From the IMG/VR virus record IMGVR_UViG_3300045974_000132, positions 186,001-250,000 of that record: a stretch of DNA of 64,000 nucleotides; one strand, 5' to 3'. The translations under genes and the position numbers were made by a program. Positions 18,271 through 48,941 of the stretch are shown piece by piece. Below the pieces are notes generated by a model. That model did not search any database, was not told where the DNA came from, and worked only from the letters and a program-made list of their open reading frames with translations. The stretch's first letter is position 1. Each line of letters starts with the position of its first letter.

Positions 18271-19463
18271 TACAATCTTCCTTGTGTTAGAGCATAACAG
18301 ATTTGAGTATCACCGATGTAGTGTTCCATGAGCATACCGGACTGCTGCAATAGACCATTACTTCCATAAGAAGGATCATCAAACTGCGTAAGCATTTCCT
18401 TGATCTTATTAACCAATTCTTCTTTATGGGCAAGATAACTTTCAAAGCTAAGTGTCCATTCAGAAGGATACAAGAAACGTTTGAAGTACATTTCGGAGTA
18501 CGACAAACGATCAGGGCTTAGAGACATGGCACCTGCAAAGATAGCTTCTGTCTGTGCAATACCGTAAGTCTCCTGCAGTGCTGCGGAGAATACAAGCTTG
18601 CTGCGACCTAGAAGATCATGATACTCGGGTTTAGTCAGTTGCTTTTCCTGACACACAATAAACTTGTAGTCCTCATATCCAGGTTCATTAGCAAACGTGT
18701 TTTCAAGGTCGTAGAAGATTTCAATTTGCTTCTCAGGAGCAATACGATGTGGGAAGAGAATGATGTTCTCTTTAGGCTTTACACTGTAGGGCGCAAGCTT
18801 ATCAAACAGATACGAATTCGGATAGCCTACCCGCAGAATCTTTTCACGAAGACTTGCCTGTGTTTCGTCACCCGCTAGTAGGTAGTCCCTTAGCCTTGAG
18901 AAGAATAGCTTGATATAAGCCTCGGTAGTGAATAGGTTTATATCAATAGCGTGAAACAAAGATGCTTCAAAAGCAGGAGCCCATTCACTCTTGATCTTAC
19001 GCCCTAAGAAGTCATTGGGGTCATGCCAACCCGCGTGCCATTGCCCAACAATAGTAACAGGGATGTCAAGCAAGTCCGACATGTAGCGCACTTGGATGAT
19101 TGCAGGATTCCAAGCATCTGTGAAGTAGAACACATCGCCAGGCTGAACACGATCATTATGGAAGTGATCTGCAATCTTTTGAGCCTGTGAAGACTTCCAA
19201 ACATTCGTAGAAGCAAAGTTAATGAAGGCACCAGTAGAAGCATCTTGCGTAGGCATATCGCCTTCGATGTTAACCAAACGGACCTCGGGTGTATTATACT
19301 CACGGAAGTGGGCATAGTGCCACGCATCATCTTGGCGCAAAAACTTGATGTTGTTTTGAGCGCAATACTTTTCAATCATTGCAGGGATGTGATCTGCCCA
19401 CTCATACGTGTAACGAGTTTCAATCTTTTCCAGTGGCACCAGCCAGATTGTTTTCATAGTCAT
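18270..19463 (-). CDS. GT-B fold glycosyltransferase
   Basis: FPHRIAPEK and QETYGIAQTEA (Ex7E) motifs. Confidence 0.8.
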   Translation of the reverse strand: MTMKTIWLVPLEKIETRYTYEWADHIPAMIEKYCAQNNIKFLRQDDAWHYAHFREYNTPEVRLVNIEGDMPTQDASTGAFINFASTNVWKSSQAQKIADHFHNDRVQPGDVFYFTDAWNPAIIQVRYMSDLLDIPVTIVGQWHAGWHDPNDFLGRKIKSEWAPAFEASLFHAIDINLFTTEAYIKLFFSRLRDYLLAGDETQASLREKILRVGYPNSYLFDKLAPYSVKPKENIILFPHRIAPEKQIEIFYDLENTFANEPGYEDYKFIVCQEKQLTKPEYHDLLGRSKLVFSAALQETYGIAQTEAIFAGAMSLSPDRLSYSEMYFKRFLYPSEWTLSFESYLAHKEELVNKIKEMLTQFDDPSYGSNGLLQQSGMLMEHYIGDTQICYALTQGRL

Positions 19464-23860: not shown

Positions 23861-24904
23861 ATGGCACAAGACATAGACAACTTCGATGTGATTAGGGACG
23901 CTCTTCATCAGTATGGAGGACGGCAGAAGCCTGCAGGCGATTGGAGAATGATTCAATGCCCATTCCCTGACCACAATGACGGTGGACCTTCATGTGGCGT
24001 GTATATGCGGCGTGACGGTAGAGCTAAATTAGGATTCTTCAACTGTTTGGGCTGCGGGAAGAAAGGCGGATGGAATACATTAGCAGGCGTTGCAAATCTC
24101 CCGACAATCCAAGAATGGAATAATGCGGAAAAAAGCGTCGGTGAAGTAATCTCTAAAGCAGATGAAGAAAGTTTGCTGGGTGATCAAAGTTTGACAGTAC
24201 GCCGAGTGCTTAAAATAATGAAGTGTGAAGAAGCGCAGCCCTGGCCTGAGAATATACCTTGGCGTGGATTCAAAGGTAATCTACTTCGCTTGGTAGGCGG
24301 TCTGATTATCAATGACTACTACAATGATTCTATTGCAGCTTTATTCCCTGTACGCATCGCAGGTAAAGTCAGAGGCGCTGTCAAAGCAGTATATGAGAAG
24401 AAGACTAAAGAGCAGTTAGGTTATATCACAATGTCAGGAGAATGGGTAAACAGTTACGGACTGTTCCCATTTGAGTTTACCAAGAAGTTGATTGATAAAT
24501 ATCATTACAACTTTGTGATATTGGTTGAAGGGCCACGTGATGCACTTCGCTTATTGAAGCTCGGAATTCCAGCACTAGCTGTGTTAGGTGCAAATACGAT
24601 CGGTCGTACTAAAGCTCTTTACATTAGCAGCTTAGGCGTAGATACATATTATGTTATGCCTGATAATGATATGGGCGGTACAAAACTGTGGAAGAATCTG
24701 AAGGAAGCTCTAGGTAGAAAGAAATGCAATGTAAAGCAGTTGAAGCTTCCGAAAGAAAAAGGAGAGGACGGTAAAGTAATAAAGATGGATCCGTTCAATG
24801 CCCCACGTGAGGTAATATCTAATTTAAAGACTCTGTTGAGAGAACGTCACGGCTGGGCTAATGAAGACATATATGCAATTCAGACGCGAAAGGTTGGTGT
24901 ATGA
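23861..24904 (+). CDS. DNA primase (Zn finger + TOPRIM)
   Basis: CPFPDH...CLGC; VEGPRDA; PDND. Confidence 0.85.
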   Translation: MAQDIDNFDVIRDALHQYGGRQKPAGDWRMIQCPFPDHNDGGPSCGVYMRRDGRAKLGFFNCLGCGKKGGWNTLAGVANLPTIQEWNNAEKSVGEVISKADEESLLGDQSLTVRRVLKIMKCEEAQPWPENIPWRGFKGNLLRLVGGLIINDYYNDSIAALFPVRIAGKVRGAVKAVYEKKTKEQLGYITMSGEWVNSYGLFPFEFTKKLIDKYHYNFVILVEGPRDALRLLKLGIPALAVLGANTIGRTKALYISSLGVDTYYVMPDNDMGGTKLWKNLKEALGRKKCNVKQLKLPKEKGEDGKVIKMDPFNAPREVISNLKTLLRERHGWANEDIYAIQTRKVGV

Positions 24905-25209
24905 GTTCTTGGATTCTTGAAATAGATACTGATTCAGACTGTTGGTTGAACTTTATAAATCCTGTAAATAATGAAGAGAACAAGTTAAGATCAAGAATAA
25001 GGGCAGAATTTAACGGAGCTACGCATTTAACAAAGCTATTCAGTTTTCTTGATACGCTAGAGGTTGTAGATAGGCCAGATAAAGAAGGTTGTGCAGTAGA
25101 ATTAAAGCGCTACCTAAAACAGTTACGCAGAGTCAAAAGTGAAGACTTCCGCAAGGGTGGAAACATCACAGTCTCTTATAAGAAGTTGGTTGTTGAATTT
25201 TCAATATAA
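24901..25209 (+). CDS. hypothetical protein
   Basis: ATGA overlap with primase. Confidence 0.65.
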   Translation: MSSWILEIDTDSDCWLNFINPVNNEENKLRSRIRAEFNGATHLTKLFSFLDTLEVVDRPDKEGCAVELKRYLKQLRRVKSEDFRKGGNITVSYKKLVVEFSI

Positions 25210-25218
25210 GGATTAATT

Positions 25219-25908
25219 ATGTCAATAAAAAGCGACAAGTGGATTACAAGGATGTGTTCTCCGAACGGGGAAGAAGGAGAGCGCTACGGTAACGACGGTG
25301 AGATACTAGTACCGGGTAGGGAATCACGTTTACCAATGATCTGGCCGTTCGAGCCTAATCAAGTACGTTCGCGGGAAGCACCGGTAGTGTATAGCCCAGG
25401 GTCAAACTTGCATGACGATCTGTACCGAGGACCACGGCCTGTTATAAGCTACGGCTGTTCCTCTTACGGTTACGACATTCGCTGCGGCCGTGAGTTCAAG
25501 ATATTCACCAACATCAATTCATCAATCATTGATCCAAAGAACTTTGACCCAAAGTGTTTTGTAGATCACATTGGTGAATACTGCATAATCCCACCCAATT
25601 CGTTTGCACTAGCACGCACTGTTGAGTATCTTCGTATTCCTCGCGCTGTTCTGACTATTTGCTTAGGTAAGTCAACGTATGCGCGATGCGGTATCATTGT
25701 CAATGTAACGCCGTTTGAACCCGAGTGGGAGGGTTACGCTACACTGGAATTCTCGAATACAACACCCTTGCCTGCAAAGATTTATGCTAACGAAGGTTGT
25801 GCTCAGATCATGTTCTTCGAGAGCGATGAACAATGTGAAACATCTTATAAGGATCGCAATGGAAAGTATCAGTGTCAAGAAGCATTGCCCGTAACACCAA
25901 AGCTGTAA
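25219..25908 (+). CDS. dcd: dCTP deaminase (proteobacterial type, with insertions)
   Basis: [36 protein letters not shown]. Confidence 0.95.
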
Positions 25909-25972
25909 CACCTGAGTTACATAACACAATACAATAGAATCACTATAAACCCAAGCAATAAAGGTATAATCC

Positions 25973-28462
25973 ATGACTTTTATCGAGTCTATCAAAGATG
26001 TATATGAGGTACCAGAAGGCATGCCTCTAGCGGTATTTCAGAATAAGTACAGCCGAGTCAAATACCTCGAAGACAACCCGAACTATGATGCAACTGTAAT
26101 AGGTAGCAACCCGAAACGCCCTGTATATCAAACATGGGAAGAGCGTATCACAGAAGTTGTCGAAGGTAACTTCACTCTCGATCCGCGTTTCGGACCAAAG
26201 ACGCCAGAAAACTGTGCTTCATTCTTTGATGATCTGTATGCACCCTGGGACAATCTAGGTACTAAAGAAGAATTCTCAGCACGTAAAGAATTCCGTGATA
26301 CACTGCGCTTATCTAAGCAAGGTGTAATGCCTTACTCCGGTCGACATTTGCAGCACGGTGATAGAGTTCAGTATGCAAAGACAGGTGAGTTATTTACCAA
26401 CTGTTCTACTGCAATGTTCTCATGGACATTGTTCTATCTTCTACTCAAAGGCAGCGGTGTAGGTCGTGATTACTCTTCAGATATTTGCTGGGTTGACTGG
26501 GAGTACATGCCTGAGTGCCGTTTCGTACTCGACGGGCCAGATCAATGGGGTAACGGCGGTCATCCGGACTATGAGCCGTGGATTGAAAGTCTGCGTTCAG
26601 CAAGACACAAGTACGACAGTGAAGGTGAGAAGGTTCGTTGGTTTGATGTAGAAGACAGCGCAGAAGGCTGGGTCAAGATGATTATGATTCTTGAGACAGC
26701 TGCCTTCCATAAGAACAACAAAGAGCATCTGTTTGTCTTTAACTTTACGCCAGTTCGGAGTAAAGGCACGCCAATAAAAGGTCAGCAAGATAGACCAGCT
26801 TCAGGACCAGTACCGTTGATTGAAGCAATGATTAAGATAATGACCATCAAAGGGGCAGGATTTAAACCTTGGAAGCAAGCATTATTCATTGATGACTATC
26901 TAGCAGCATGCGTTGCAGTAGGTGGAATTCGGCGGGCTGCACGAATGTCTACTAAGTATTGGAAAGACCGTGATGCTCTGGAATTTGCTGACATTAAACG
27001 TGAAGGCTTCTTGAAGAGTGCTAATAATAGCTTGCTGGTAGACGCTGAATTTTGGGAGCTTGTGCGCAACCCAACAAACCGCGAATCATGGGCTGTACAT
27101 GCGCGCCGTGTGTTTGCAGCTGCAACGGAAGCTGCGTATCATGATGGTACAGGGGAACCTGGCTTCATCAACGTCGATCAACTTACGTGGAGCGATGAAG
27201 GTATTGATGAAATCACGGTGGACAACTACATAGATGTTCATTACGATAAGAATGTTCTTCGTGTGCACAAGAAGACGAAGGAAATGATTGGCTACATGCT
27301 GGACAAAGCCAAGCATAAGAAGTACAAGGTGATCGTGAATCCTTGTGCAGAAATCCCAATTGCGGTTTGGGGTGCTTACTGTACGATCGGTGATATCTGC
27401 GGTACTTATGCACGAACGCTTGAAGAATTCAAGTATGCTTGCTGGTTGATGGCTCGTGCCCTGATGCGTGTAAACCTGATGCAGTATATGTACAGTGCGG
27501 AAGTAAAACGCACTATGCGTATCGGCGTAGGTATGATTGGCATCTTCGAGTTTGCTTGGAATCACTTCCAAATCAATCTGCACGAAATCCTGCTGTCTGA
27601 ATTGCCGCCAGATCATCCGAAGGTGCTGGCTGCTATCGAAGCGGAAATAGTCCAGACAATGGGAGAAGATGGCTCTACGTTGGATAGTTACAACGTATAT
27701 GAGCGGAGCTTGCAGTACGCCAAGTTCATCGAAGAGTGTCGTGAAACAGTTGAACAATCGGCTCGTCAATATGCTGCTGAAATCGGTGTCAATGTTCCGC
27801 ACACGTTTATTACATTGAAGCCCTCAGGCACTGCATCTAAAGCACTAAATAGTACCGAAGCTGCAAACCCACCCTCAAACAATTTCTATCTGCGTAATAA
27901 CCAGTATCCGTTTGATGATCCTCAGTATCTTGAACTACGTCGTCGCGGATATCCTTGGCAAGACATAAGTCACTCGTATGCAGGTCATCACATCGTTGGT
28001 TTTCCAACCAAGCAGCAAATATCGGACATCATGGGTGACAAGGTTGTTGTATCAGCAGAACTTACGCCTGAAGATCAGTATGAGTGGTTGCGTTGGCTTG
28101 AACGTCATTGGTTTGGTGGCAAAGGCCGTAATGGTCAAGTATCATTCACAATGAAATACTACCCAGATCAGGTATCATTCAAAGAGTTTCAACAGTTGTT
28201 AATCGAGCACCAAAGCACAGTTAAGTGTTGCTCATGGATGCAGATCATGGATATGAGTAAGTTCCCATATCAGCCTGAGCAGCCAATTACTGAAAAGCAA
28301 TACTATGATTACCTAGAAGGCATTGATCGTGTTCAGATTGAAAGCTATGATGAATCAGAACTACAGTGTCCCGGTGGCTTCTGCCCAATCGAGAAAGATC
28401 AGTTGGTCTTTGCAGACGGTAGTAATGTGACAGATGCTGATCTTCAAGGTGCTTCAAACTAA
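25973..28462 (+). CDS. nrdJ: class II (adenosylcobalamin-dependent) ribonucleotide reductase
   Basis: TNC, GSGVG, ASGP, VGGIRRAA, GEPG, NPCAE, KPSGT, C-terminal CPGGFC; no beta subunit nearby. Confidence 0.85.
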   Translation: MTFIESIKDVYEVPEGMPLAVFQNKYSRVKYLEDNPNYDATVIGSNPKRPVYQTWEERITEVVEGNFTLDPRFGPKTPENCASFFDDLYAPWDNLGTKEEFSARKEFRDTLRLSKQGVMPYSGRHLQHGDRVQYAKTGELFTNCSTAMFSWTLFYLLLKGSGVGRDYSSDICWVDWEYMPECRFVLDGPDQWGNGGHPDYEPWIESLRSARHKYDSEGEKVRWFDVEDSAEGWVKMIMILETAAFHKNNKEHLFVFNFTPVRSKGTPIKGQQDRPASGPVPLIEAMIKIMTIKGAGFKPWKQALFIDDYLAACVAVGGIRRAARMSTKYWKDRDALEFADIKREGFLKSANNSLLVDAEFWELVRNPTNRESWAVHARRVFAAATEAAYHDGTGEPGFINVDQLTWSDEGIDEITVDNYIDVHYDKNVLRVHKKTKEMIGYMLDKAKHKKYKVIVNPCAEIPIAVWGAYCTIGDICGTYARTLEEFKYACWLMARALMRVNLMQYMYSAEVKRTMRIGVGMIGIFEFAWNHFQINLHEILLSELPPDHPKVLAAIEAEIVQTMGEDGSTLDSYNVYERSLQYAKFIEECRETVEQSARQYAAEIGVNVPHTFITLKPSGTASKALNSTEAANPPSNNFYLRNNQYPFDDPQYLELRRRGYPWQDISHSYAGHHIVGFPTKQQISDIMGDKVVVSAELTPEDQYEWLRWLERHWFGGKGRNGQVSFTMKYYPDQVSFKEFQQLLIEHQSTVKCCSWMQIMDMSKFPYQPEQPITEKQYYDYLEGIDRVQIESYDESELQCPGGFCPIEKDQLVFADGSNVTDADLQGASN

Positions 28463-36481: not shown

Positions 36482-37387
36482 ATGAAACTTACACGACGCG
36501 GTTTTCTAAAGCTTTCTGGCAGCATGTTCTTGGCAGCAGTTCCTATACCTGCTTTCTGTGAGGTATCTTCTTCTGAGAATGTTATAACTCAGGCTTTGCT
36601 AAATCCTAGCATCCCTCTACCTATTACAGCACTGACTGACATAAACAATATCATCTGCTCCGTGCATGAAGCTTATGAATTCATTATCAATAAGTTTGAA
36701 GTTAATGATGCAAGAACGCAGTCTTACATGCGCGAGGGTGTATATCAAACTATGCAGGAGTTTCAGTCCCGGCGTCAGATATATGATTTCGCTGTTGTCT
36801 GTGATGATTCAAACAACCCTGTGTCTGTCATTGATTCTAATGATCTGATACTAGACGTTGCTATTAAGGTATTTCCTTTTGCAGATGCTCATTTGCGATT
36901 TTCAATGCAGGAAGACTTACGGGATGTGATTGATAAGTCTTTGCATATTTCAGATGTGATACTTGTCACCAATGATCTGAATCTGGATGTGCAAACGCTT
37001 GCTAAGAGTAAGCCTGCCTTATGCGTATATGCAGTAGCCCAATCTGCAACACCTTCAGACTTAGAGAATTTACACTCGGCTATATGCTCCACCTTTTTTG
37101 ACAATTATCGTTCACATAAAGAATACGGTGAAGATAATACATTGATGGGGCCGCGCAGAGGACTCCTTAGGTCTGAGCATATGTCTAAGGTGAATTGGAA
37201 TAGTACCTACTTGTCACACGCTCAACGCGATGCCGCTTATGCGCGAGGTATAAACTCTTTTACTAACTATCCGGGTATGGGTGTATGTGCCTGGAGTTCA
37301 TTTGCTTGGTTTAACGGTGTTCTGTATGATCGAACTACCATAACATCTTTTACTTCACGCGATATTTCTTTTGAGGAAGTTGTATGA
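36482..37387 (+). CDS. Tat-signal protein built from tail-sheath-like domains in permuted order
   Basis: TRRGFLK Tat motif; FEVND...IYDFAVVCDDSNN..VID; RRG...QRDAAY.RGIN...PGMG. Confidence 0.7.
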   Translation: MKLTRRGFLKLSGSMFLAAVPIPAFCEVSSSENVITQALLNPSIPLPITALTDINNIICSVHEAYEFIINKFEVNDARTQSYMREGVYQTMQEFQSRRQIYDFAVVCDDSNNPVSVIDSNDLILDVAIKVFPFADAHLRFSMQEDLRDVIDKSLHISDVILVTNDLNLDVQTLAKSKPALCVYAVAQSATPSDLENLHSAICSTFFDNYRSHKEYGEDNTLMGPRRGLLRSEHMSKVNWNSTYLSHAQRDAAYARGINSFTNYPGMGVCAWSSFAWFNGVLYDRTTITSFTSRDISFEEVV

Positions 37388-41098: not shown

Positions 41099-41800
41099 AT
41101 GCACGTAATCCCACTCGGTACCGGCGGCGCTTTTGATGAATACGAAACCTGTTACCTAGTTAATGATTCTGTTTTGATTGACTGCGGTCCGTCTTCAATC
41201 AAACGAGCATTCCGGTATGGGTGGGCTGAAGATATTACTCACGTGTTCCTTAGTCACATACATGCAGACCACATTGGTGGTTTTGAAGCCTTGTACTACT
41301 ATCGCAAGTATGTGACTAAGACACCTATCAAGGAAGTATATTGTCCGGGTGAATTCTATAAGCTTGCAAAGCAAATGCCTTTCTTACGTAACAATAAGGT
41401 CAACTTCCAGTTCAACTTCCTAGCAAGCTATTCCAGCAACTTCGTATTTATTGATACTGAGTTTGGTACTATAGGTGTACAACCGTTTCATGTGCTGCAC
41501 GGTGAACTAGAAGCTTACGGCTTTACTATCATTGACCAAGCAACTGGTAAAGTATTAATCATATCAGGTGATACAGACGGCCCTGTTAATGCTCGCCGCA
41601 GTAAATTTGATCTTATGTTTCATGACATAGGATGGGAAGGTCTACCCACTGAGTCTGATGACCATAAAGTTCATCCTCGTGAGTCCGAACTCGTAGAAGC
41701 TTTTGGGGAAGGGGCACCGATTGTTACAATTCACACCGCTGATCGTACTCCCCTTGGTGTATATCCCCGCGCTAAAATTGATAAGGTGTACAATGTCTGA
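41099..41800 (+). CDS. metallo-beta-lactamase fold hydrolase (RNase Z-like)
   Basis: LGTGGA, LIDCG, SHIHADH, SGDT. Confidence 0.85.
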   Translation: MHVIPLGTGGAFDEYETCYLVNDSVLIDCGPSSIKRAFRYGWAEDITHVFLSHIHADHIGGFEALYYYRKYVTKTPIKEVYCPGEFYKLAKQMPFLRNNKVNFQFNFLASYSSNFVFIDTEFGTIGVQPFHVLHGELEAYGFTIIDQATGKVLIISGDTDGPVNARRSKFDLMFHDIGWEGLPTESDDHKVHPRESELVEAFGEGAPIVTIHTADRTPLGVYPRAKIDKVYNV

Positions 41801-43175
41801 TAACAAACCGTTAGTTGTGTATCACAAAATCTCAGAGGCTCTCGATTGCTCTGATGGTTTTGCGTCTGCTTTTGTATTCTGGTTGCGCCACGGTGATAGC
41901 TATGACTACGTACCGGGTATGTACCATAAGAGGCTACCTCTTGAACTCTTTAAAGATCGTGAAGTTTATTTCGTAGACTTTGCCTATGATGATACCGAGT
42001 ACATGGATCAGATAAATTCAGTTTCTGAATCGTTATTAGTGCTAGACCACCATAGAACTTCGATGATCTCTTTAGGCACTAAGCCTTATGCTAGATTGGA
42101 CACTAAAAGTTGCGGCTGCAAGATGGCTTGGGATCTTTTATTTCCAACTCTTCCTTTTCCTTTGATGCTCGATCAGGTGTTTGATAAAGATGTCCAGTCT
42201 AAAAGACTTGCAGATAATGAGCCTTTTATGCAACGCTTACGTAGTATGCCCAATGACTTTAAAGTATGGCATAAGCTCCAGCTTACGTTAGATACTCGTG
42301 GCCCTGCATATGATAAGTTTGTTAAAGAAGGCGACCTCCTTCTCGCTGGGCATAATCAACATTGTGATATTATTGCAGCCAGTGCTTTTCCTATTGTCTT
42401 AGGTGGCATTGAAGGGCTTGCAGTAAATGCTAATAAGTTTTATGCCCATGACGTAGGTGAACTTCTTGCACTAAAGTCTAATACTTTTGGAGCCTCTTTC
42501 CATTTTCGTGAAGATAACTGTGTAGAATTCAGCCTTACAAGTGTAAATGACTTTGATGTAGAAAAGCTTGCCTTTAAGTATAAAGGAGGAGGCCATATTA
42601 ACGCATCCGGCTTCTATATTCCTATTACAAGCTTCTCCAGCATAGTCGACCTTTCAAGTAAGAATGTTTCCTTCTATCTTACTCTTCAAACGCACATTGA
42701 TGAATTCTGCACATCGTATTCTGCACCTTTATTCAGTGAGCAAGCTTCTCATAGGATTGTGCATGATCTAGCAGAATACCTATCTACTAAGTTGGGTAGT
42801 GTGGTAGATGAACTTCAGATTAAAGTCACTACAGTTCGTTCTGAGAATATTGCCCTTAATACTCGAATCCTTCTGTTCATTGCTAATACACTGAATCTAC
42901 CTATGAAGGACTCTAAGAAACGATGGTATCATCATATACTTCCTTACAAGATAAAATCAGTTCCTGTATATGACGACAGCCAGATTTCAGAACTGCTGGA
43001 GTTAGCCCGTTCTGATAATCAAGCGGATACTAACGATTTCATCGTTAACAACCTTCTTCAAACTGTAAAATATAGGTATGAAGCAACACTTATAGACCCT
43101 ACTGCTTATGAAGCATCTGTCAACGTTAGCTTCCCTAATAGCAATTTCTTCATCCAACATAAATTCTCTGTCTAA
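41793..43175 (+). CDS. DHH/DHHA1 phosphoesterase with an extra C-terminal domain
   Basis: DG, FVDF, LDHH, GGGH; about 170 aa C-terminal extension. Confidence 0.85.
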   Translation: MSDNKPLVVYHKISEALDCSDGFASAFVFWLRHGDSYDYVPGMYHKRLPLELFKDREVYFVDFAYDDTEYMDQINSVSESLLVLDHHRTSMISLGTKPYARLDTKSCGCKMAWDLLFPTLPFPLMLDQVFDKDVQSKRLADNEPFMQRLRSMPNDFKVWHKLQLTLDTRGPAYDKFVKEGDLLLAGHNQHCDIIAASAFPIVLGGIEGLAVNANKFYAHDVGELLALKSNTFGASFHFREDNCVEFSLTSVNDFDVEKLAFKYKGGGHINASGFYIPITSFSSIVDLSSKNVSFYLTLQTHIDEFCTSYSAPLFSEQASHRIVHDLAEYLSTKLGSVVDELQIKVTTVRSENIALNTRILLFIANTLNLPMKDSKKRWYHHILPYKIKSVPVYDDSQISELLELARSDNQADTNDFIVNNLLQTVKYRYEATLIDPTAYEASVNVSFPNSNFFIQHKFSV

Positions 43176-43187
43176 GGAATACACACC

Positions 43188-43886
43188 ATGATTTTCAATA
43201 CTCCCGCTCACCCTCTTAAACTTACCGGAACGGTATTCAAAGCTATTGATCCTTTAACCGGTGAGCGCGACTCTTATATCAGTTTGGCCATTCGTACTGC
43301 CTCTCCTTTGAATGATCGCCAGAATCTGCTTCATGCGGTACTGGGTATTGCTGATGAACTGGTTGAACTCGGTAGCTTAATCCGCTATGAGCAACCTGTT
43401 GAAGGTGCTGTATCGGCTTTTGAAAAGTTTAATCTAGCCCTGATTAAAGAGCTAGGCGACATTACTTGGTTTACGGCTCTGTTCGCTGATTGGGTTCAAA
43501 AGGTAAGCTTGGATGTTGATGCCAACACTCTATTTACTCAAATGGTTGAGACATCTACCAATAACTTCTTGGCTACTAAAGAAGTTAGTCAAGGTGATAC
43601 CTCTGATGATCTTATCAGCGACATCTATCAAGAAGGTGTGTACGGTACTGTTGGTCGGTGTATTTCTTTGACTAAGAAGGAATACGCTTACGGTAAGCCG
43701 ATGTCCTTAGATGCTGCTCAACGCTTGTTTGAGGAAGCTCTTACTATCGTTATGACCGTTACTGGTGAAAAGAATATTCCTTTTCTTGATGTGCTGGATC
43801 GCAACATTGAAAAGCTTTCTGCTCGTTACAAGAAAGCAACCTTCACGCAAGAAGAAGCTATCAATCGTGATGAAACGAAGGAGTAA
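43188..43886 (+). CDS. MazG-like nucleotide pyrophosphohydrolase
   Basis: GIADELVE, ELGDITWF, NIEKLSARY. Confidence 0.8.
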   Translation: MIFNTPAHPLKLTGTVFKAIDPLTGERDSYISLAIRTASPLNDRQNLLHAVLGIADELVELGSLIRYEQPVEGAVSAFEKFNLALIKELGDITWFTALFADWVQKVSLDVDANTLFTQMVETSTNNFLATKEVSQGDTSDDLISDIYQEGVYGTVGRCISLTKKEYAYGKPMSLDAAQRLFEEALTIVMTVTGEKNIPFLDVLDRNIEKLSARYKKATFTQEEAINRDETKE

Positions 43887-45887: not shown

Positions 45888-46354
45888 TGAGTTTAGACTT
45901 TAAGGAAGTTCTTGATCTTCGCATAGCTGTGCAAGAAAAGATTAAGAATGATCCAGAGGTATCTTCGGAAGCTTTAATTCGGGACGCTATTATCTGTAGT
46001 AATACGGCTCTTGCAGGCAGTACGCCTAGATCCTGTTTGATTGAAGCGATTGCTTTACTAACAGTGGCTGTAGACCTTAATGATTATGAAAGGCATACTC
46101 CTCACCATAAGATTAAAGCTTTACTAGTCAATGGTACTAAGCACGGTGAGATTGTTGAAGTCTCCCCTGAAATAAGTATGCACCTTGCTGATGATAGTAA
46201 AGAAATCTATACTCGACATAGCCATACTGAAAAGGATGGTCACTACTATCTAGTACTGGTGTTGGAACTGTCTTTAGTCTCTGTGCATCTGATAAGTATA
46301 GAAGAAAACATTGCACATGCTAAATCTAAAATGAAGTTAGGAGTATCTGCATGA
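45887..46354 (+). CDS. hypothetical protein
   Basis: coupled. Confidence 0.6.
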   Translation: MSLDFKEVLDLRIAVQEKIKNDPEVSSEALIRDAIICSNTALAGSTPRSCLIEAIALLTVAVDLNDYERHTPHHKIKALLVNGTKHGEIVEVSPEISMHLADDSKEIYTRHSHTEKDGHYYLVLVLELSLVSVHLISIEENIAHAKSKMKLGVSA

Positions 46355-47106
46355 AACTACTATTAGTCGGTGGGTCTTGTCATGGCTCCACCCATGATGT
46401 TGCATCCCCTTATTCTGCTTTTTATGCACTTAAGGGCTGTGCTTACAAAGTTACTCCTGAAACGATCACTGTAGAAGAACGTAAGCAGAAAGTAACCGTT
46501 GCTATCTATGAAGGTTGCAGCGACCTTGAAACTTGGGAATTATCTGAGCGCATACTAAATGCTATTCACCTGTATGCTGCTAAGGCTGTAGAACAGATAG
46601 GTGAGGAAGGCGTACAAAGTGTTAAGTGTGTACCCGGTCTTTCTGGACCCAATATTCCAAATATCGTCGGTGAAGCTGCTGACAAGGTACCCGGTGCAGA
46701 CAAACGTACTGTTGCTGGCGTAGTAGGCCGCTTGCTAGAAGAAGCTGTTGAACTAGCTCTTGAAGCAGGACTTCCTACAGGTGAGATATATGCACATGTT
46801 ACAGACAGTATCTATAATCAGTATGTCAAAGCTTCAAAAGTAACAGGTAGTATCATCTACCCTTCTACTAAGCTTGACGATGATCCTTGGGCGTTCCGAG
46901 CAGAAGTCGCGGGTGAAATAGGTGACGTTGCTGTGATGCTTATGGATGTAGCACACCGTGCCGGAATTGACTATGAAGCAGCACGCCAAGCAAAGATACA
47001 GTCCTTCATTACTAAGGTAGACGAGGGCAAGTTCTATGCCAATGATAAAGGCTTGCTGTACGTTCGTAAACCGCACATGGATTTTAAGAACAATGGAACT
47101 GAATAG
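46351..47106 (+). CDS. protein with a C-terminal MazG-like (all-alpha NTP-PPase) domain
   Basis: RLLEEAVELA...GEIGDV. Confidence 0.6.
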   Translation: MKLLLVGGSCHGSTHDVASPYSAFYALKGCAYKVTPETITVEERKQKVTVAIYEGCSDLETWELSERILNAIHLYAAKAVEQIGEEGVQSVKCVPGLSGPNIPNIVGEAADKVPGADKRTVAGVVGRLLEEAVELALEAGLPTGEIYAHVTDSIYNQYVKASKVTGSIIYPSTKLDDDPWAFRAEVAGEIGDVAVMLMDVAHRAGIDYEAARQAKIQSFITKVDEGKFYANDKGLLYVRKPHMDFKNNGTE

Positions 47107-47313: not shown

Positions 47314-47814
47314 ATGAATAAAGAATCTCAGAAGGTGAATGTGCAAGAGTTAATGAAGCAGGTAGATGCTTCTATTGCAGCCTCTAAAGTATTTGACTAT
47401 AAAGGCTTAGCTGATGGTGTTACAAAGGCTACTTTCAATTTTTTTGCCGACTTAAGGGATCGAGGTGTTATCACCTCTTTTGCCGTTTCTGATGCAAAAG
47501 TAGTACGTCACACTTGGACAACATTGTATCCTAATTTGCTAAAGCGCCTTCTAGCTTGGATTGCTTATGACTTAGGCTTAGGCGATGAAACAACACCTAG
47601 GTGGTATCATCGTGTTCTACCTTACACTGTTATTAAAGCTATCGTAGTAAATCAAGAATACTTCGATACTGATACACCTAAAGAAGAAGTGTATTGGTAT
47701 ATTAATGAAATATATGAGGCTACGATTAAGTATCCTCATGAAACAATCTGTCAAGACATAGCGGTAGCTCCTGTAACTCCTATAGAGCGTATCTGCATAA
47801 CACTTAAAGCTTAG
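47314..47814 (+). CDS. protein resembling the tail-sheath C-terminal domain with an RWYHxxLPY insertion
   Basis: FFADLRDRGVITSFAV and DIAVAPVTPIERICITL ends. Confidence 0.55.
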   Translation: MNKESQKVNVQELMKQVDASIAASKVFDYKGLADGVTKATFNFFADLRDRGVITSFAVSDAKVVRHTWTTLYPNLLKRLLAWIAYDLGLGDETTPRWYHRVLPYTVIKAIVVNQEYFDTDTPKEEVYWYINEIYEATIKYPHETICQDIAVAPVTPIERICITLKA

Positions 47815-47825
47815 GGCATAACATA

Positions 47826-48941
47826 ATGGAATCCACTTCACTAGCAGTCAAGTATCGTCCTAAGACTCTAAATGGGCTGATAGGACAAGACCATATTATC
47901 TCTGCTGTTACAGGCATGCTGAAGACTAAGAAAATGCCTTCTGCTATCATGTTGTATGGTCCAACAGGTTTGGGTAAGACAACTACTGCCCGCATCATTG
48001 TTCGCTACTTGAACTGTGCAAACCCAAATCCTGAAACATATGCTCCTTGCGGCGAATGTCAAAGCTGCAAGATGAAAGAACACCCAGACGTTATGGAACT
48101 CAACGCTGCTGACTCTCGCGGTATTGATGACGTTCGTAATCTTATCAACTTGGCTAAGAACATGCCTACGTTTGGTAAGAAACGTTTTATGATTATCGAC
48201 GAAGCACAGCAGCTTCCTACTTTGTCACAACAAGCTTTGCTGAAACCTATCGAGGAGCCACCTAAAGATACAATCTGGATCATTTGTACGATGACTCCAG
48301 AGAAGATGCTTCCTGCTATTGCAAAGCGTTGTACTAGATTGCAAGTTAAGCCTGTTGAGGCGCAAGTATTGGTGAAGCGCCTTTGGCAAATCGGCAAGCG
48401 TGAAGGTGTAGATTTTAAAACAATTGAAAACGGTACTAAGGTACTTAAAACAATTGCTGATTTCTCTAACGGTGGGGTACGTGATGCTATCTCTGCTTTA
48501 GAACCTATTATCTATGCTGTACAGAGCGGAGAAAATGTAGATCCTAATACCGTATTATCTAACTTCCTCGCAAGCCCTGAAGCGGAACTAGATAAGCAAG
48601 CTGTGAATGTCCTTATCGCTGTATTCAAGAATGATCTGAAACTTTTGTTAGAACAAACGCAGGTGTCAGATAATATTCGAGGCATTCTTAATAAGCTTCG
48701 CTGGTTGATCGACTACCTTCTGTCTAACAGTATAGGTAAAGCAAAGTTCATTCCTTATAGCGGGCGTCTATTTGCTAAAGAGTCTAAAGCTTACAGTATA
48801 AAGGTAACACTTGCTACCCTTATCAGCCTTCAGAGTCTTCTGGTAGATATTGAAGTTCGCTTAAATAGCTTCAGCCTTGAGGAGCGCGTTGTCTTTACTG
48901 CGATGGTAGGAGAACTCATTAATAACAGGGCTTCAAAATGA
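47826..48941 (+). CDS. dnaX: clamp loader subunit, DNA Pol III gamma/tau-like
   Basis: LAVKYRP, GPTGLGKTT, CGECQSC, IIDEA, LLKPIEEPP, RC. Confidence 0.9.
   Translation: MESTSLAVKYRPKTLNGLIGQDHIISAVTGMLKTKKMPSAIMLYGPTGLGKTTTARIIVRYLNCANPNPETYAPCGECQSCKMKEHPDVMELNAADSRGIDDVRNLINLAKNMPTFGKKRFMIIDEAQQLPTLSQQALLKPIEEPPKDTIWIICTMTPEKMLPAIAKRCTRLQVKPVEAQVLVKRLWQIGKREGVDFKTIENGTKVLKTIADFSNGGVRDAISALEPIIYAVQSGENVDPNTVLSNFLASPEAELDKQAVNVLIAVFKNDLKLLLEQTQVSDNIRGILNKLRWLIDYLLSNSIGKAKFIPYSGRLFAKESKAYSIKVTLATLISLQSLLVDIEVRLNSFSLEERVVFTAMVGELINNRASK

What the first reader, a model, noticed from the sequence alone, without database searches (positions are those of the whole stretch)
47314..47814. Second sheath-like fragment shares an unrecognised RWYHxxLPY domain with the C-terminus of the DHH phosphoesterase
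Seen: 47314-47814 has RLLAWIAYDLGL...RWYHRVLPY...YEATIKYP. The extra C-terminal domain of the DHH protein (41793-43175) has RILLFIANTLNL...RWYHHILPY...YEATLIDP. This is clear internal paralogy. The flanks of 47314 (FFADLRDRGVITSFAV; DIAVAPVTPIERICITL) look like the helix and last strands of a sheath C-terminal domain. Inference: a sheath-derived module occurs both free and fused to a phosphoesterase, and may target or scaffold the enzyme.
Basis: partly seen in the sequence, partly recalled or inferred. Interest (0 to 1): 0.6.

Follow-up and report, generated by a model that had tools for sequence, protein, structure and literature searches.

The report
Tail-sheath domain reused beside replication genes
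A small gene next to the clamp loader of an uncultured pond jumbo phage, and the extra tail of a DHH phosphoesterase 4 kb upstream, are two versions of one rare module: a tail-sheath C-terminal domain with a conserved ~85-residue insert, sitting among DNA and nucleotide-metabolism genes instead of tail genes.

Summary
P0001 (47314-47814, 166 aa) and residues ~287-460 of the DHH protein (41793-43175) share a core. Pairwise it is only 30 residues (E 2e-5), and the flanks alone are at chance. An exhaustive profile search found 27 relatives in two classes: free ~150-210 aa proteins and ~440-480 aa DHH fusions. Profile against profile they are homologous over 104 columns (98.7%, E 1.9e-16). The free-family profile hits the T4 gp18 sheath C-terminal domain (E 1.5e-9) and this phage's own two sheaths, in two co-linear pieces around an ~85-aa insert carrying R..A..[KR]WYHxx[LF]PY. 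For the DHH-fused form the sheath link is only transitive, plus weak structural hits. P0001 is not a recent duplicate: free and fused forms are separate clades. Neither form needs the other. All contexts are replication or nucleotide metabolism, never tail modules. Function is unknown. The most likely role is a non-catalytic docking or binding module. It is a new variant of a known domain and matches no Pfam, PHROG or NCBIfam family of its own.

The parts
47314..47814 (+). P0001, 166 aa: a free-standing sheath-C-derived module, member of a rare family of ~150-210 aa phage proteins. The gene ends 12 nt before the clamp-loader gene.
   Evidence: ORF. Family alignment A4 at 24-37% identity. A4 profile against T4 gp18, E 1.5e-9. 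Sister to P0019 in the tree. P0019 is likewise directly upstream of a clamp loader.
47332..47490 (+). P0001 residues ~7-59: the N-terminal two helices plus first strand, homologous to the sheath C-terminal domain (gp18 545-607).
   Evidence: hhalign of A4 against this phage's own sheath C-termini: 95%, E 3.9e-8, P0001 7-59. hmmsearch domain 1 against gp18.
47491..47745 (+). P0001 residues ~60-144: an ~85-aa insertion (HTWTxLYP ... RxLAxIA ... RWYHxxLPY ... YxAxIxxP) where T4 gp18 has about 16 residues. This is the part shared most strongly with the DHH C-terminus.
   Evidence: Gap between the two gp18-matching pieces: profile positions 67-153 against gp18 607-623. Conserved columns W68, Y72, P73, R78, A81, W97, Y98, H99, P103, Y104. 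hhalign of A4 against A5.
47746..47811 (+). P0001 residues ~145-166: the last strands (DIAVAPVTPIERICITLKA), co-linear with gp18 623-651. Weak on its own.
   Evidence: Second hmmsearch domain against gp18: 5.9 bits, not significant alone. Second domains against this phage's own sheaths.
41793..42650 (+). DHH/DHHA1 phosphoesterase core of P0002 (residues 1-286). The DHH and GGGH motifs are present.
   Evidence: phrog_4771 'DHH phosphoesterase', E 6.9e-50, residues 2-286. Weak Pfam DHH and DHHA1 matches. The PaBG 283-aa DHH aligns to residues 7-286 only. Invariant H86, H87 and G265-H268.
42651..43175 (+). C-terminal module of P0002 (residues ~287-460): the fused version of the same module, with an RWYHHILPY core.
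   Evidence: Alignments A2 and A5. hhalign of A4 against A5, E 1.9e-16. AF2 model at pLDDT 77: alpha/beta with 5 strands. VIA hits to TssE and sheath C-domains, Z 4.4-7.8.
47826..48941 (+). Clamp loader (context gene immediately downstream of P0001).
   Evidence: PF13177, E 2.5e-34. phrog_5846, E 5.7e-84.
41099..41800 (+). Metallo-beta-lactamase-fold hydrolase. It overlaps the DHH start by 8 nt (context gene, conserved partner in all relatives).
   Evidence: PF00753, E 3.6e-13; the Apyc1 model reaches only 22.9 bits against a cut-off of 50. Synteny in L003-L006.

Best explanation
SHOWN:
- P0001 is a real gene. It belongs to a rare family of small phage proteins derived from the C-terminal (core) domain of the contractile-tail sheath protein.
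- In this family the short loop after the first strand (about 16 aa in T4 gp18) has been replaced by an ~85-residue insertion. The insertion carries a nearly invariant R..A..[KR]WYHxx[LF]PY signature.
- The same module forms the extra C-terminal ~170 residues of the DHH/DHHA1 phosphoesterase P0002 and its orthologues. Related DHH enzymes, such as PaBG's, lack it.
- Free and fused versions are old, separate lineages. The tree is consistent with one fusion event (support 91/80, not decisive).
- Both versions are encoded in same-strand replication and nucleotide-metabolism blocks, far from the phage's two true sheath genes. The neighbours are thymidylate synthase, HD, MBL, MazG, clamp loader, SbcC and dCTP deaminase.

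INFERRED:
- The sheath domain has been exapted as a soluble, non-catalytic accessory module.
- The AF2 model shows a five-stranded sheet. I infer that the insertion supplies in cis the extra strands that neighbouring subunits donate in trans in a polymerised sheath. The domain would then be self-contained and not polymerise.
- The conserved WYH/PY face would then bind a shared partner. That partner could be a component of the replication or nucleotide-salvage machinery, or the nucleic-acid or nucleotide substrate itself.
- In the fusion, this would localise the DHH enzyme or present its substrate. The free form would act on the same partner without the enzyme.
For: Homology of the two forms.

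Two size classes and architectures.

Sheath origin of the free family:
- (gp18 E 1.5e-9; Afp2, Afp3, Pvc2 at 1e-4 to 8e-4)
- (own sheaths 1.3e-6 and 1.3e-5)
- (95%, E 3.9e-8)
- (PF17482 in 7 of 11 relatives, one at 34.1 bits against a cut-off of 26.9)
- (only tail-sheath PHROGs)
- (tblastn of P0029 hits only annotated sheaths)
- (language-model neighbours are small PF17482 proteins)

Fold of the fused module. Ten of the 50 top rows are sheath C-domains or gp25/TssE-like proteins.

Non-tail context.

Module absent from the DHH of the nearest isolate group.

Separate clades.

The sheath core mediates assembly and tube contact: PMC9230969.
Against: - P0001 alone matches no sheath model, and its own AF2 model failed (pLDDT 36).
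- The DHH-fused family has no direct sequence match to sheath.
- Foldseek found nothing.
- The VIA Z-scores (at most 7.8) lie in the range that unrelated folds reach. IMPase N-domains score similarly.
- The 'cis strand complementation' idea rests only on a secondary-structure count from a pLDDT 77 model.
- No binding partner, ligand or oligomeric state was tested, because the complex prediction could not be run.
- Expression is unproven: no RNA run holds the phage.
Confidence: 0.6

Rival explanations
1. Anti-defence reading. The WYH insertion is a pocket that binds nucleotides or cyclic oligonucleotides. Fused to DHH, it captures immune second messengers (CBASS, Pycsar, type III CRISPR) for hydrolysis. 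Free, it acts as a sponge.
For: - DHH phosphodiesterases of jumbo phages have been proposed to counter such signals (PMC7824862).
- The conserved partner gene directly upstream is an MBL hydrolase with a weak Apyc1-like match.
- The invariant residues are Arg, His, Trp and Tyr, a typical nucleotide-binding set.
- The free form exists without the fusion, as a sponge could.
Against: - The Apyc1 match reaches only 22.9 bits against a cut-off of 50.
- In PaBG the DHH sits between SbcC and SbcD, and the free genes sit beside a clamp loader or dCTP deaminase. Both point to DNA and nucleotide metabolism.
- No similarity to known sponges or sensor domains appeared in Pfam, PHROGs or NCBIfam.
- PADLOC was not searched.
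Confidence: 0.17
2. Structural reading. These are minor tail proteins (a gp25-like sheath initiator, a cap or a decoration) that join the unusual two-component sheath through the handshake sheet. The DHH fusion would then be a virion-attached enzyme.
For: - Clear sheath homology.
- The top structural hit is TssE in the T6SS baseplate, Z 7.8.
- The phage group has a two-component sheath (PMC7412058).
- Some members keep the gp18-like C-terminal 'G-A-x-F' tail.
Against: - Every context found is replication or nucleotide metabolism on the early/middle-type strand block.
- P0001 has no counterpart at the syntenic site in the closest relatives. That is unexpected for a structural part.
- The module lacks the N-terminal half of the sheath core and gives no GPW_gp25 match.
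- P0001 ends right after the last strand, with no C-terminal arm.
Confidence: 0.1
3. P0001 is a decaying, non-functional partial copy of the DHH C-terminus or of a sheath gene, or the similarity is chance.
For: - The pairwise match is short.
- The word-indexed search found no relatives.
- It is absent from L003 and L004.
- The genome holds other sheath-like fragments.
Against: - At least 16 free members share its length, its order of elements and its invariant residues at 24-37% identity. That pattern indicates purifying selection.
- P0001 groups with free members of other phages, not with its own DHH.
- Chance is excluded by E 1.9e-16 and by uniqueness within the genome.
Confidence: 0.04

Closest known systems
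Phage tail sheath C-terminal domain (Pfam PF17482 Phage_sheath_1C; T4 gp18 residues ~545-651; Afp2/3, Pvc2/3)
   Same: The N-terminal two helices, the first strand and (weakly) the last strands of the free family align co-linearly with it. One member passes Pfam's cut-off.
   Different: - It is only the C-terminal part of the sheath core, with no N-terminal core half and no outer domains.
- An ~85-aa insertion replaces a ~16-aa loop.
- It is encoded among replication and nucleotide-metabolism genes.
- It is fused to an enzyme in one lineage.
- P0001 itself is below detection by the Pfam model.
gp25 / TssE sheath-initiator proteins (small stand-alone proteins with the sheath-core-like fold)
   Same: Both are small stand-alone proteins with a related alpha/beta fold. 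The best structural match of the fused module is a 121-residue chain of the T6SS baseplate entry 6gj1 (Z 7.8, 78 residues aligned). I take that chain to be TssE. Small chains (112-133 residues) of the P1, A-1(L) and phiKZ baseplate entries, which I take to be gp25-like from their size, score Z 4.6-5.3.
   Different: There is no sequence match to GPW_gp25, no baseplate gene context, and the insertion is absent from gp25/TssE. The Z values are within the range of chance folds.
Phage DHH phosphoesterases (PHROG 4771; e.g. PaBG gp298, phage EL, Vibrio phage DHH proteins)
   Same: Residues 1-286 of P0002 match (E 6.9e-50), with DHH and GGGH motifs.
   Different: Known members have a different C-terminus or none. 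The PHROG profile has about 70 further positions that P0002 does not match. PaBG's enzyme stops at the core. None of 89 isolate records covers residues >294.
The 301-aa sheath-like ORF in the same window (36482-37387)
   Same: It is also a sheath-C-derived ORF in the nucleotide-metabolism block.
   Different: It has the canonical 'VVCDxxNN' loop and no WYH insertion. The family profiles do not detect it, and it shows no significant similarity to P0001 (E 0.16). It is a separate derivative.

Membership tests
Tail sheath C-terminal domain (PF17482 / sheath conserved core) | Sequence match to the Pfam model at or above the gathering score (26.9 bits) | tested here: not met
   P0001 has no Pfam hit even at E <= 1, and the genome-wide PF17482 scan does not list it. 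Family members do match: P0029 at 34.1 bits (above the cut-off), P0022 at 23.2, P0028 at 21.4, and P0017, P0019, P0024 and P0027 at 15-18 bits.
Tail sheath C-terminal domain (PF17482 / sheath conserved core) | Profile-level homology to experimentally solved sheath proteins, co-linear over the domain | tested here: met
   The A4 profile hits T4 gp18 at E 1.5e-9 (545-607, plus a weak match to 623-651), Afp2 at 1.1e-4, Pvc2 at 2.6e-4 and Afp3 at 8e-4. It hits this phage's own sheaths at E 1.3e-6 and 1.3e-5, and hhalign gives 95%. For the DHH-fused family this feature is not met directly.
Functional tail sheath protein | [quoted passage not shown] | tested here: not met
   P0001 is 166 aa. PF04984 is found only in the two full-length sheath genes, outside the window. 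The core definition comes from PMC9230969.
Functional tail sheath protein | Encoded in the tail-gene module and present in virions | tested here: not met
   The context is clamp loader, dCTP deaminase, SSB or polymerase in every locus examined. Virion presence is not testable here.
gp25/TssE sheath initiator | GPW_gp25 sequence family membership; baseplate gene context | tested here: not met
   There is no Pfam GPW_gp25 hit. Only a structural resemblance of the fused module to a 121-residue chain of 6gj1 (taken to be TssE), at Z 7.8, which is within the chance range.
DHH/DHHA1 phosphoesterase (for P0002 residues 1-286) | DHH and DHHA1 domains with the DHH and GGGH motifs | tested here: met
   phrog_4771 at E 6.9e-50. 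The DHH (85-87) and GGGH (265-268) motifs are conserved in the orthologues. The Pfam DHH and DHHA1 hits are below gathering (18 and 20.3 bits), so membership rests on the PHROG and on the motifs.
Anti-Pycsar Apyc1 (for the upstream MBL gene, relevant to the anti-defence rival) | Match to PF23023 at or above 50 bits | tested here: not met
   22.9 bits over 72 residues. The generic Lactamase_B match is stronger.

The most novel reading that the evidence does not exclude
The WYH insertion turns a sheath domain into a binder of nucleotide or cyclic-oligonucleotide signals. The DHH fusion would be a substrate-capturing anti-defence phosphodiesterase, and the free protein a new class of signal sponge built on a tail-sheath scaffold. 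A less likely alternative is that the module still docks onto sheath or tube assemblies. It would then deliver an enzyme to contractile machines, or cap them.
Probability: 0.15. Interest if true: 0.8.

Novelty: new variant of a known kind. Interest (0 to 1): 0.55.

Why it matters
Sheath proteins are regarded as dedicated structural parts of contractile injection machines. Here their core C-terminal domain turns up as a soluble module with a conserved novel insertion. It is encoded among replication and nucleotide-metabolism genes, and in one lineage it is fused to an enzyme. That would be a clear case of a virion fold recruited to a non-structural role.

It also gives a defined, testable handle on part of the large pool of jumbo-phage ORFans: a boundary at residue ~287 and an invariant R/A/WYH/PY signature. 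It marks a family that has no entry of its own in Pfam, PHROGs or NCBIfam and no representative detected in isolate phage genomes.

If the module proves to bind nucleotides or a replisome component, it would explain how these phage DHH enzymes are targeted.

Tried and rejected
Searches that found nothing:
- megablast and tblastn of the region and of P0001 against 50,697 isolate phage genomes
- single-protein scans of viral contigs
- word-indexed homologue search for P0001, self only
- Pfam and PHROGs on P0001 and on the DHH C-terminus, and NCBIfam on P0001 and full-length P0002: no meaningful match to either module; the only hit is a far-below-cut-off NrnA match in the DHH core

Structure:
- AF2 of P0001 with the 5-sequence alignment failed (pLDDT 36).
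- The ESM Atlas model of P0001 is also poor (pLDDT 0.52), and its hits are meaningless.
- Foldseek of the DHH C-terminal model gave no usable match against PDB, BFVD or Atlas, and neither did the VIA second look.

Direct sheath tests of the fused family: the A5 profile against PDB sequences and against this phage's own sheaths gave no signal.

Leads dropped:
- P0001 against the 301-aa sheath-like ORF: not significant.
- Similarity of the P0017 N-terminal domain to the window's 251-aa ORF: not significant.

Uninformative:
- Promoter and terminator scans were at chance level.
- No RNA run holds the phage. The laid contigs were the same phage at low coverage in three pond metagenomes.

Could not be run:
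- Complex prediction for P0001 with the DHH C-terminus: unreachable on all seven tries, so there is no verdict.
- A degenerate DNA pattern scan was not attempted, because thousands of chance hits were expected.

No alternative genetic code was used or needed.

Full report
SETTING. The window is bases 186001-250000 of a 286,393-bp virus record with direct terminal repeats, rated complete. It is a jumbo phage from pond metagenomes, seen in three studies. By clamp-loader similarity (37-40% identity) its nearest isolates are the Pseudomonas phages PaBG, Lu11 and HRDY3. That group is known for a two-component tail sheath (PMC7412058). In line with this, the genome has two full-length sheath genes, of 575 and 533 aa, both outside the window.

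THE OBSERVATION. ORF 47314-47814 (P0001, 166 aa) and the DHH protein 41793-43175 (P0002, 460 aa) exist as described and contain every quoted string.

The pairwise evidence is thin. BLASTP aligns 30 residues (P0001 78-106 with DHH 358-387; 43% identity, E 2e-5). Shuffling gives z = 8.7, but once the core is removed the flanks are at chance.

The match is nonetheless specific. An HMM of the DHH C-terminus built from four orthologues, run over all 4346 six-frame ORFs of the genome, finds P0001 as the only non-self hit (E 6e-5; next best about 2). The motif WYH..[LF].Y occurs nowhere else. hhalign of that profile against P0001 gives 95%, E 3e-8.

RELATIVES. The word-indexed search found no relative of P0001, so I used the one exhaustive search. 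It did find three full-length (458-460 aa) DHH orthologues, 51-56% identical in the C-terminal part. These lie on syntenic phage contigs with the order MBL hydrolase, DHH-460, MazG-like ... clamp loader. P0001 matches those orthologues' C-termini over about 100 residues (28% over 110 aa, E 5e-6).

An exhaustive hmmsearch of 1.84 billion representatives, using the joint alignment A3, returned 27 proteins:
- DHH fusions of about 440-480 aa, carrying DHH/DHHA1
- free proteins of about 147-211 aa
- one 261-aa form with an extra N-terminal domain (P0017)
- a few fragments

Four more free members were found in IMG/VR contigs.

The free family (A4, 12 sequences, 24-37% identical to P0001) and the fused family (A5, 17 sequences) are homologous by profile-profile comparison: 98.7%, E 1.9e-16, 104 columns. 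The aligned region covers the helix before the first strand, that strand, the whole WYH segment and the 'Y.A.L..P' strand. The conserved residues shared by both families are R, A, W-Y-H and P-Y. HTWxxYP is specific to the free family.

SHEATH ORIGIN. The A4 profile, searched against all PDB sequences, hits:
- T4 gp18 at E 1.5e-9
- Afp2 at 1.1e-4
- Pvc2 at 2.6e-4
- a 'phage tail sheath family protein' (9qgl) at 5.7e-4
- Afp3 at 8e-4 (all)

The match comes in two co-linear pieces. Profile positions 5-67 align with gp18 545-607. Profile positions 153-181 align with gp18 623-651; this second piece scores only 5.9 bits and is not significant alone. gp18 has about 16 residues between the pieces, while the family has about 85. 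The WYH segment is therefore an insertion into a sheath C-terminal domain.

The same two-piece pattern appears against the phage's own sheaths (E 1.3e-6 and 1.3e-5; hhalign 95%, E 3.9e-8 for P0001 residues 7-59).

Further independent support:
- Seven of 11 free relatives hit PF17482, P0029 above the gathering cut-off.
- The only PHROGs matched by family members are 'tail sheath'.
- tblastn of P0029 against isolate phages hits only annotated sheaths.
- Language-model neighbours of P0029 are small viral proteins with PF17482.

P0001 by itself reaches none of these models. The claim for P0001 rests on its family.

For the DHH-fused module there is no direct sequence signal to sheath. The link is transitive: the A4-A5 alignment overlaps the sheath-matching helix and strand. 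It is also supported by a Foldseek-independent structure search of the AF2 model. That model has pLDDT 77, with elements H-H-E-H-(WYH turn)-E-H-H-E-E-E. Ten of the 50 best rows among 48,161 chains are sheath C-domains or chains of baseplate entries that I take to be gp25/TssE-like:
- 6gj1_D at Z 7.8
- phi812, Mu, phiKZ, DSY3957, XM1 and phiCD508 sheaths at Z 4.4-5.3
- P1, A-1(L) and phiKZ baseplate chains at Z 4.6-5.3 (all)

Each Z alone lies in the range unrelated folds reach, and IMPase N-domains score similarly. I count the enrichment as suggestive only. Foldseek searches were blank.

EVOLUTION.
- In a maximum-likelihood tree of 32 modules, the free and fused forms lie on either side of one branch (91/80; 87% of bootstrap trees). 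P0001 is sister to P0019 (95/85). The 92-aa fragment P0016 was left out of the tree.
- P0001 is therefore not a recent internal duplicate. The tree is consistent with one ancient fusion, or fission.
- PaBG's DHH (283 aa) aligns only to residues 7-286 of P0002, and PaBG shows no module in 19 kb around its clamp loader. This fixes the domain boundary and shows the module is an addition in the uncultured lineage.
- Co-occurrence is not obligatory. L003 and L004 have the fusion but no free copy at the syntenic site. The ~90%-complete 224-kb record G004 has a free member but no DHH fusion. L005 and this genome have both.

CONTEXT. In the window both genes lie in one same-strand block:
- the sheath-like 301-aa ORF
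- thymidylate synthase
- HD hydrolase
- MBL hydrolase, overlapping the DHH start by 8 nt
- the DHH-module fusion
- MazG-like
- peptidase-like
- P0001
- clamp loader, 12 nt after P0001
- SbcC-like

Elsewhere the contexts are similar:
- P0019 is also directly upstream of a clamp loader.
- P0022 and P0029 are directly upstream of a dCTP deaminase/dUTPase gene.
- The G004 member lies beside SSB, a DNA methylase and a polymerase.
- None lies in a tail module.

Promoter and terminator scans are uninformative, and no RNA data exist.

MECHANISM.

Shown: a sheath C-terminal domain with a conserved insertion exists free and fused to a catalytically intact-looking DHH enzyme, in DNA and nucleotide-metabolism contexts.

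Inferred: it is a soluble, non-catalytic accessory module. The sheath core normally mediates subunit assembly and tube contact (PMC9230969). The model's five-stranded sheet suggests that the insertion supplies strands in cis, making the domain self-contained. The invariant R/WYH/PY face would then bind a shared partner or substrate, localising the DHH enzyme or presenting its substrate. I could not test binding, because the complex-prediction service was unreachable on seven attempts.

Confidence. The figure of 0.6 is for the whole explanation. My own estimates for its parts are:
- homology of the two forms: about 0.95
- sheath origin of the free family: about 0.9
- sheath origin of the fused module: about 0.7
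- the docking or presentation mechanism: about 0.3

Rivals:
- An anti-defence nucleotide binder or sponge. DHH phosphodiesterases are proposed as counter-signal enzymes in PMC7824862, and the MBL neighbour is weakly Apyc1-like.
- A minor tail component.
- A decaying fragment, which is largely refuted.

NOVELTY. The module has no family of its own in Pfam, PHROGs or NCBIfam. It has no representative detected by tblastn among 50,697 isolate phage genomes. It has only 27 representatives among 1.84 billion clusters. It is a new variant of a known domain, in two new architectures and in an unexpected genomic setting.

Noticed in passing
window 36482-37387 (+): A 301-aa ORF directly upstream of thymidylate synthase. 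Residues 70-125 are a canonical sheath C-domain segment: gp18 571-626 at E 1e-5, PF17482 at 27.5 bits, phrog_23 at E 7e-13. It has no WYH insertion. By eye, residues 245-271 (AQRDAAYARGINSFT...) resemble gp18 510-536, which in gp18 lies before that segment. This may be a permuted or scrambled sheath derivative. L005 165-1085 (306 aa) is probably its orthologue.
   Followed up: partly
G000 24547-26271 (+) and 90774-92372 (-), outside the window: Two full-length sheath genes (575 and 533 aa), as in the PaBG group's two-component sheath. There is also a weak sheath-C hit in a 79-aa frame at G000 18792-18917.
   Followed up: partly
window 41099-41800 and 41793-43175: The MBL-fold hydrolase and the DHH fusion overlap by 8 nt and are adjacent in all four related contigs. 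They form a conserved gene pair that suggests a coupled activity. The Apyc1 model match is weak (22.9 bits against a cut-off of 50).
   Followed up: partly
L021 5977-6339 (224-kb IMG/VR contig, G004): A 120-aa family member that lacks the N-terminal sheath helices and keeps only the insertion plus the last strands. It lies beside SSB, a DNA methylase and a polymerase gene. This suggests the insertion is the functional part.
   Followed up: no
P0017 (L016/L017 553-1338) and L005 8963-9397: A third architecture: an ~85-aa N-terminal domain (MN[VI]L[FL]VGGPYH.VLVSIDG...) fused ahead of the module. In L005 it lies about 2.8 kb downstream of the DHH fusion. A suspected link to the N-terminus of window ORF 46351-47106 was not significant.
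   Followed up: partly
L023 (PaBG 136552-137403): In PaBG the core-only DHH phosphoesterase lies between the SbcC and SbcD genes. This hints that the DHH enzymes of this group work in DNA-end processing rather than in signalling.
   Followed up: no
window 46351-47106 and 43188-43886: Two MazG-like genes lie within 4 kb. The first is named by PHROGs. The 251-aa ORF looks MazG-like only by eye and had no Pfam or PHROG hit. L003 and L004 also carry homing-endonuclease insertions (DUF723, GIY-YIG) in this block.
   Followed up: no
ESM Atlas neighbours of P0029: There are large clusters (78-475 members) of small viral 'hypothetical proteins' of 103-137 aa, in which 21-32% of members carry PF17482. 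Free-standing sheath-C-like proteins may be a wider, unnamed class, or these may be gene fragments from short contigs.
   Followed up: no
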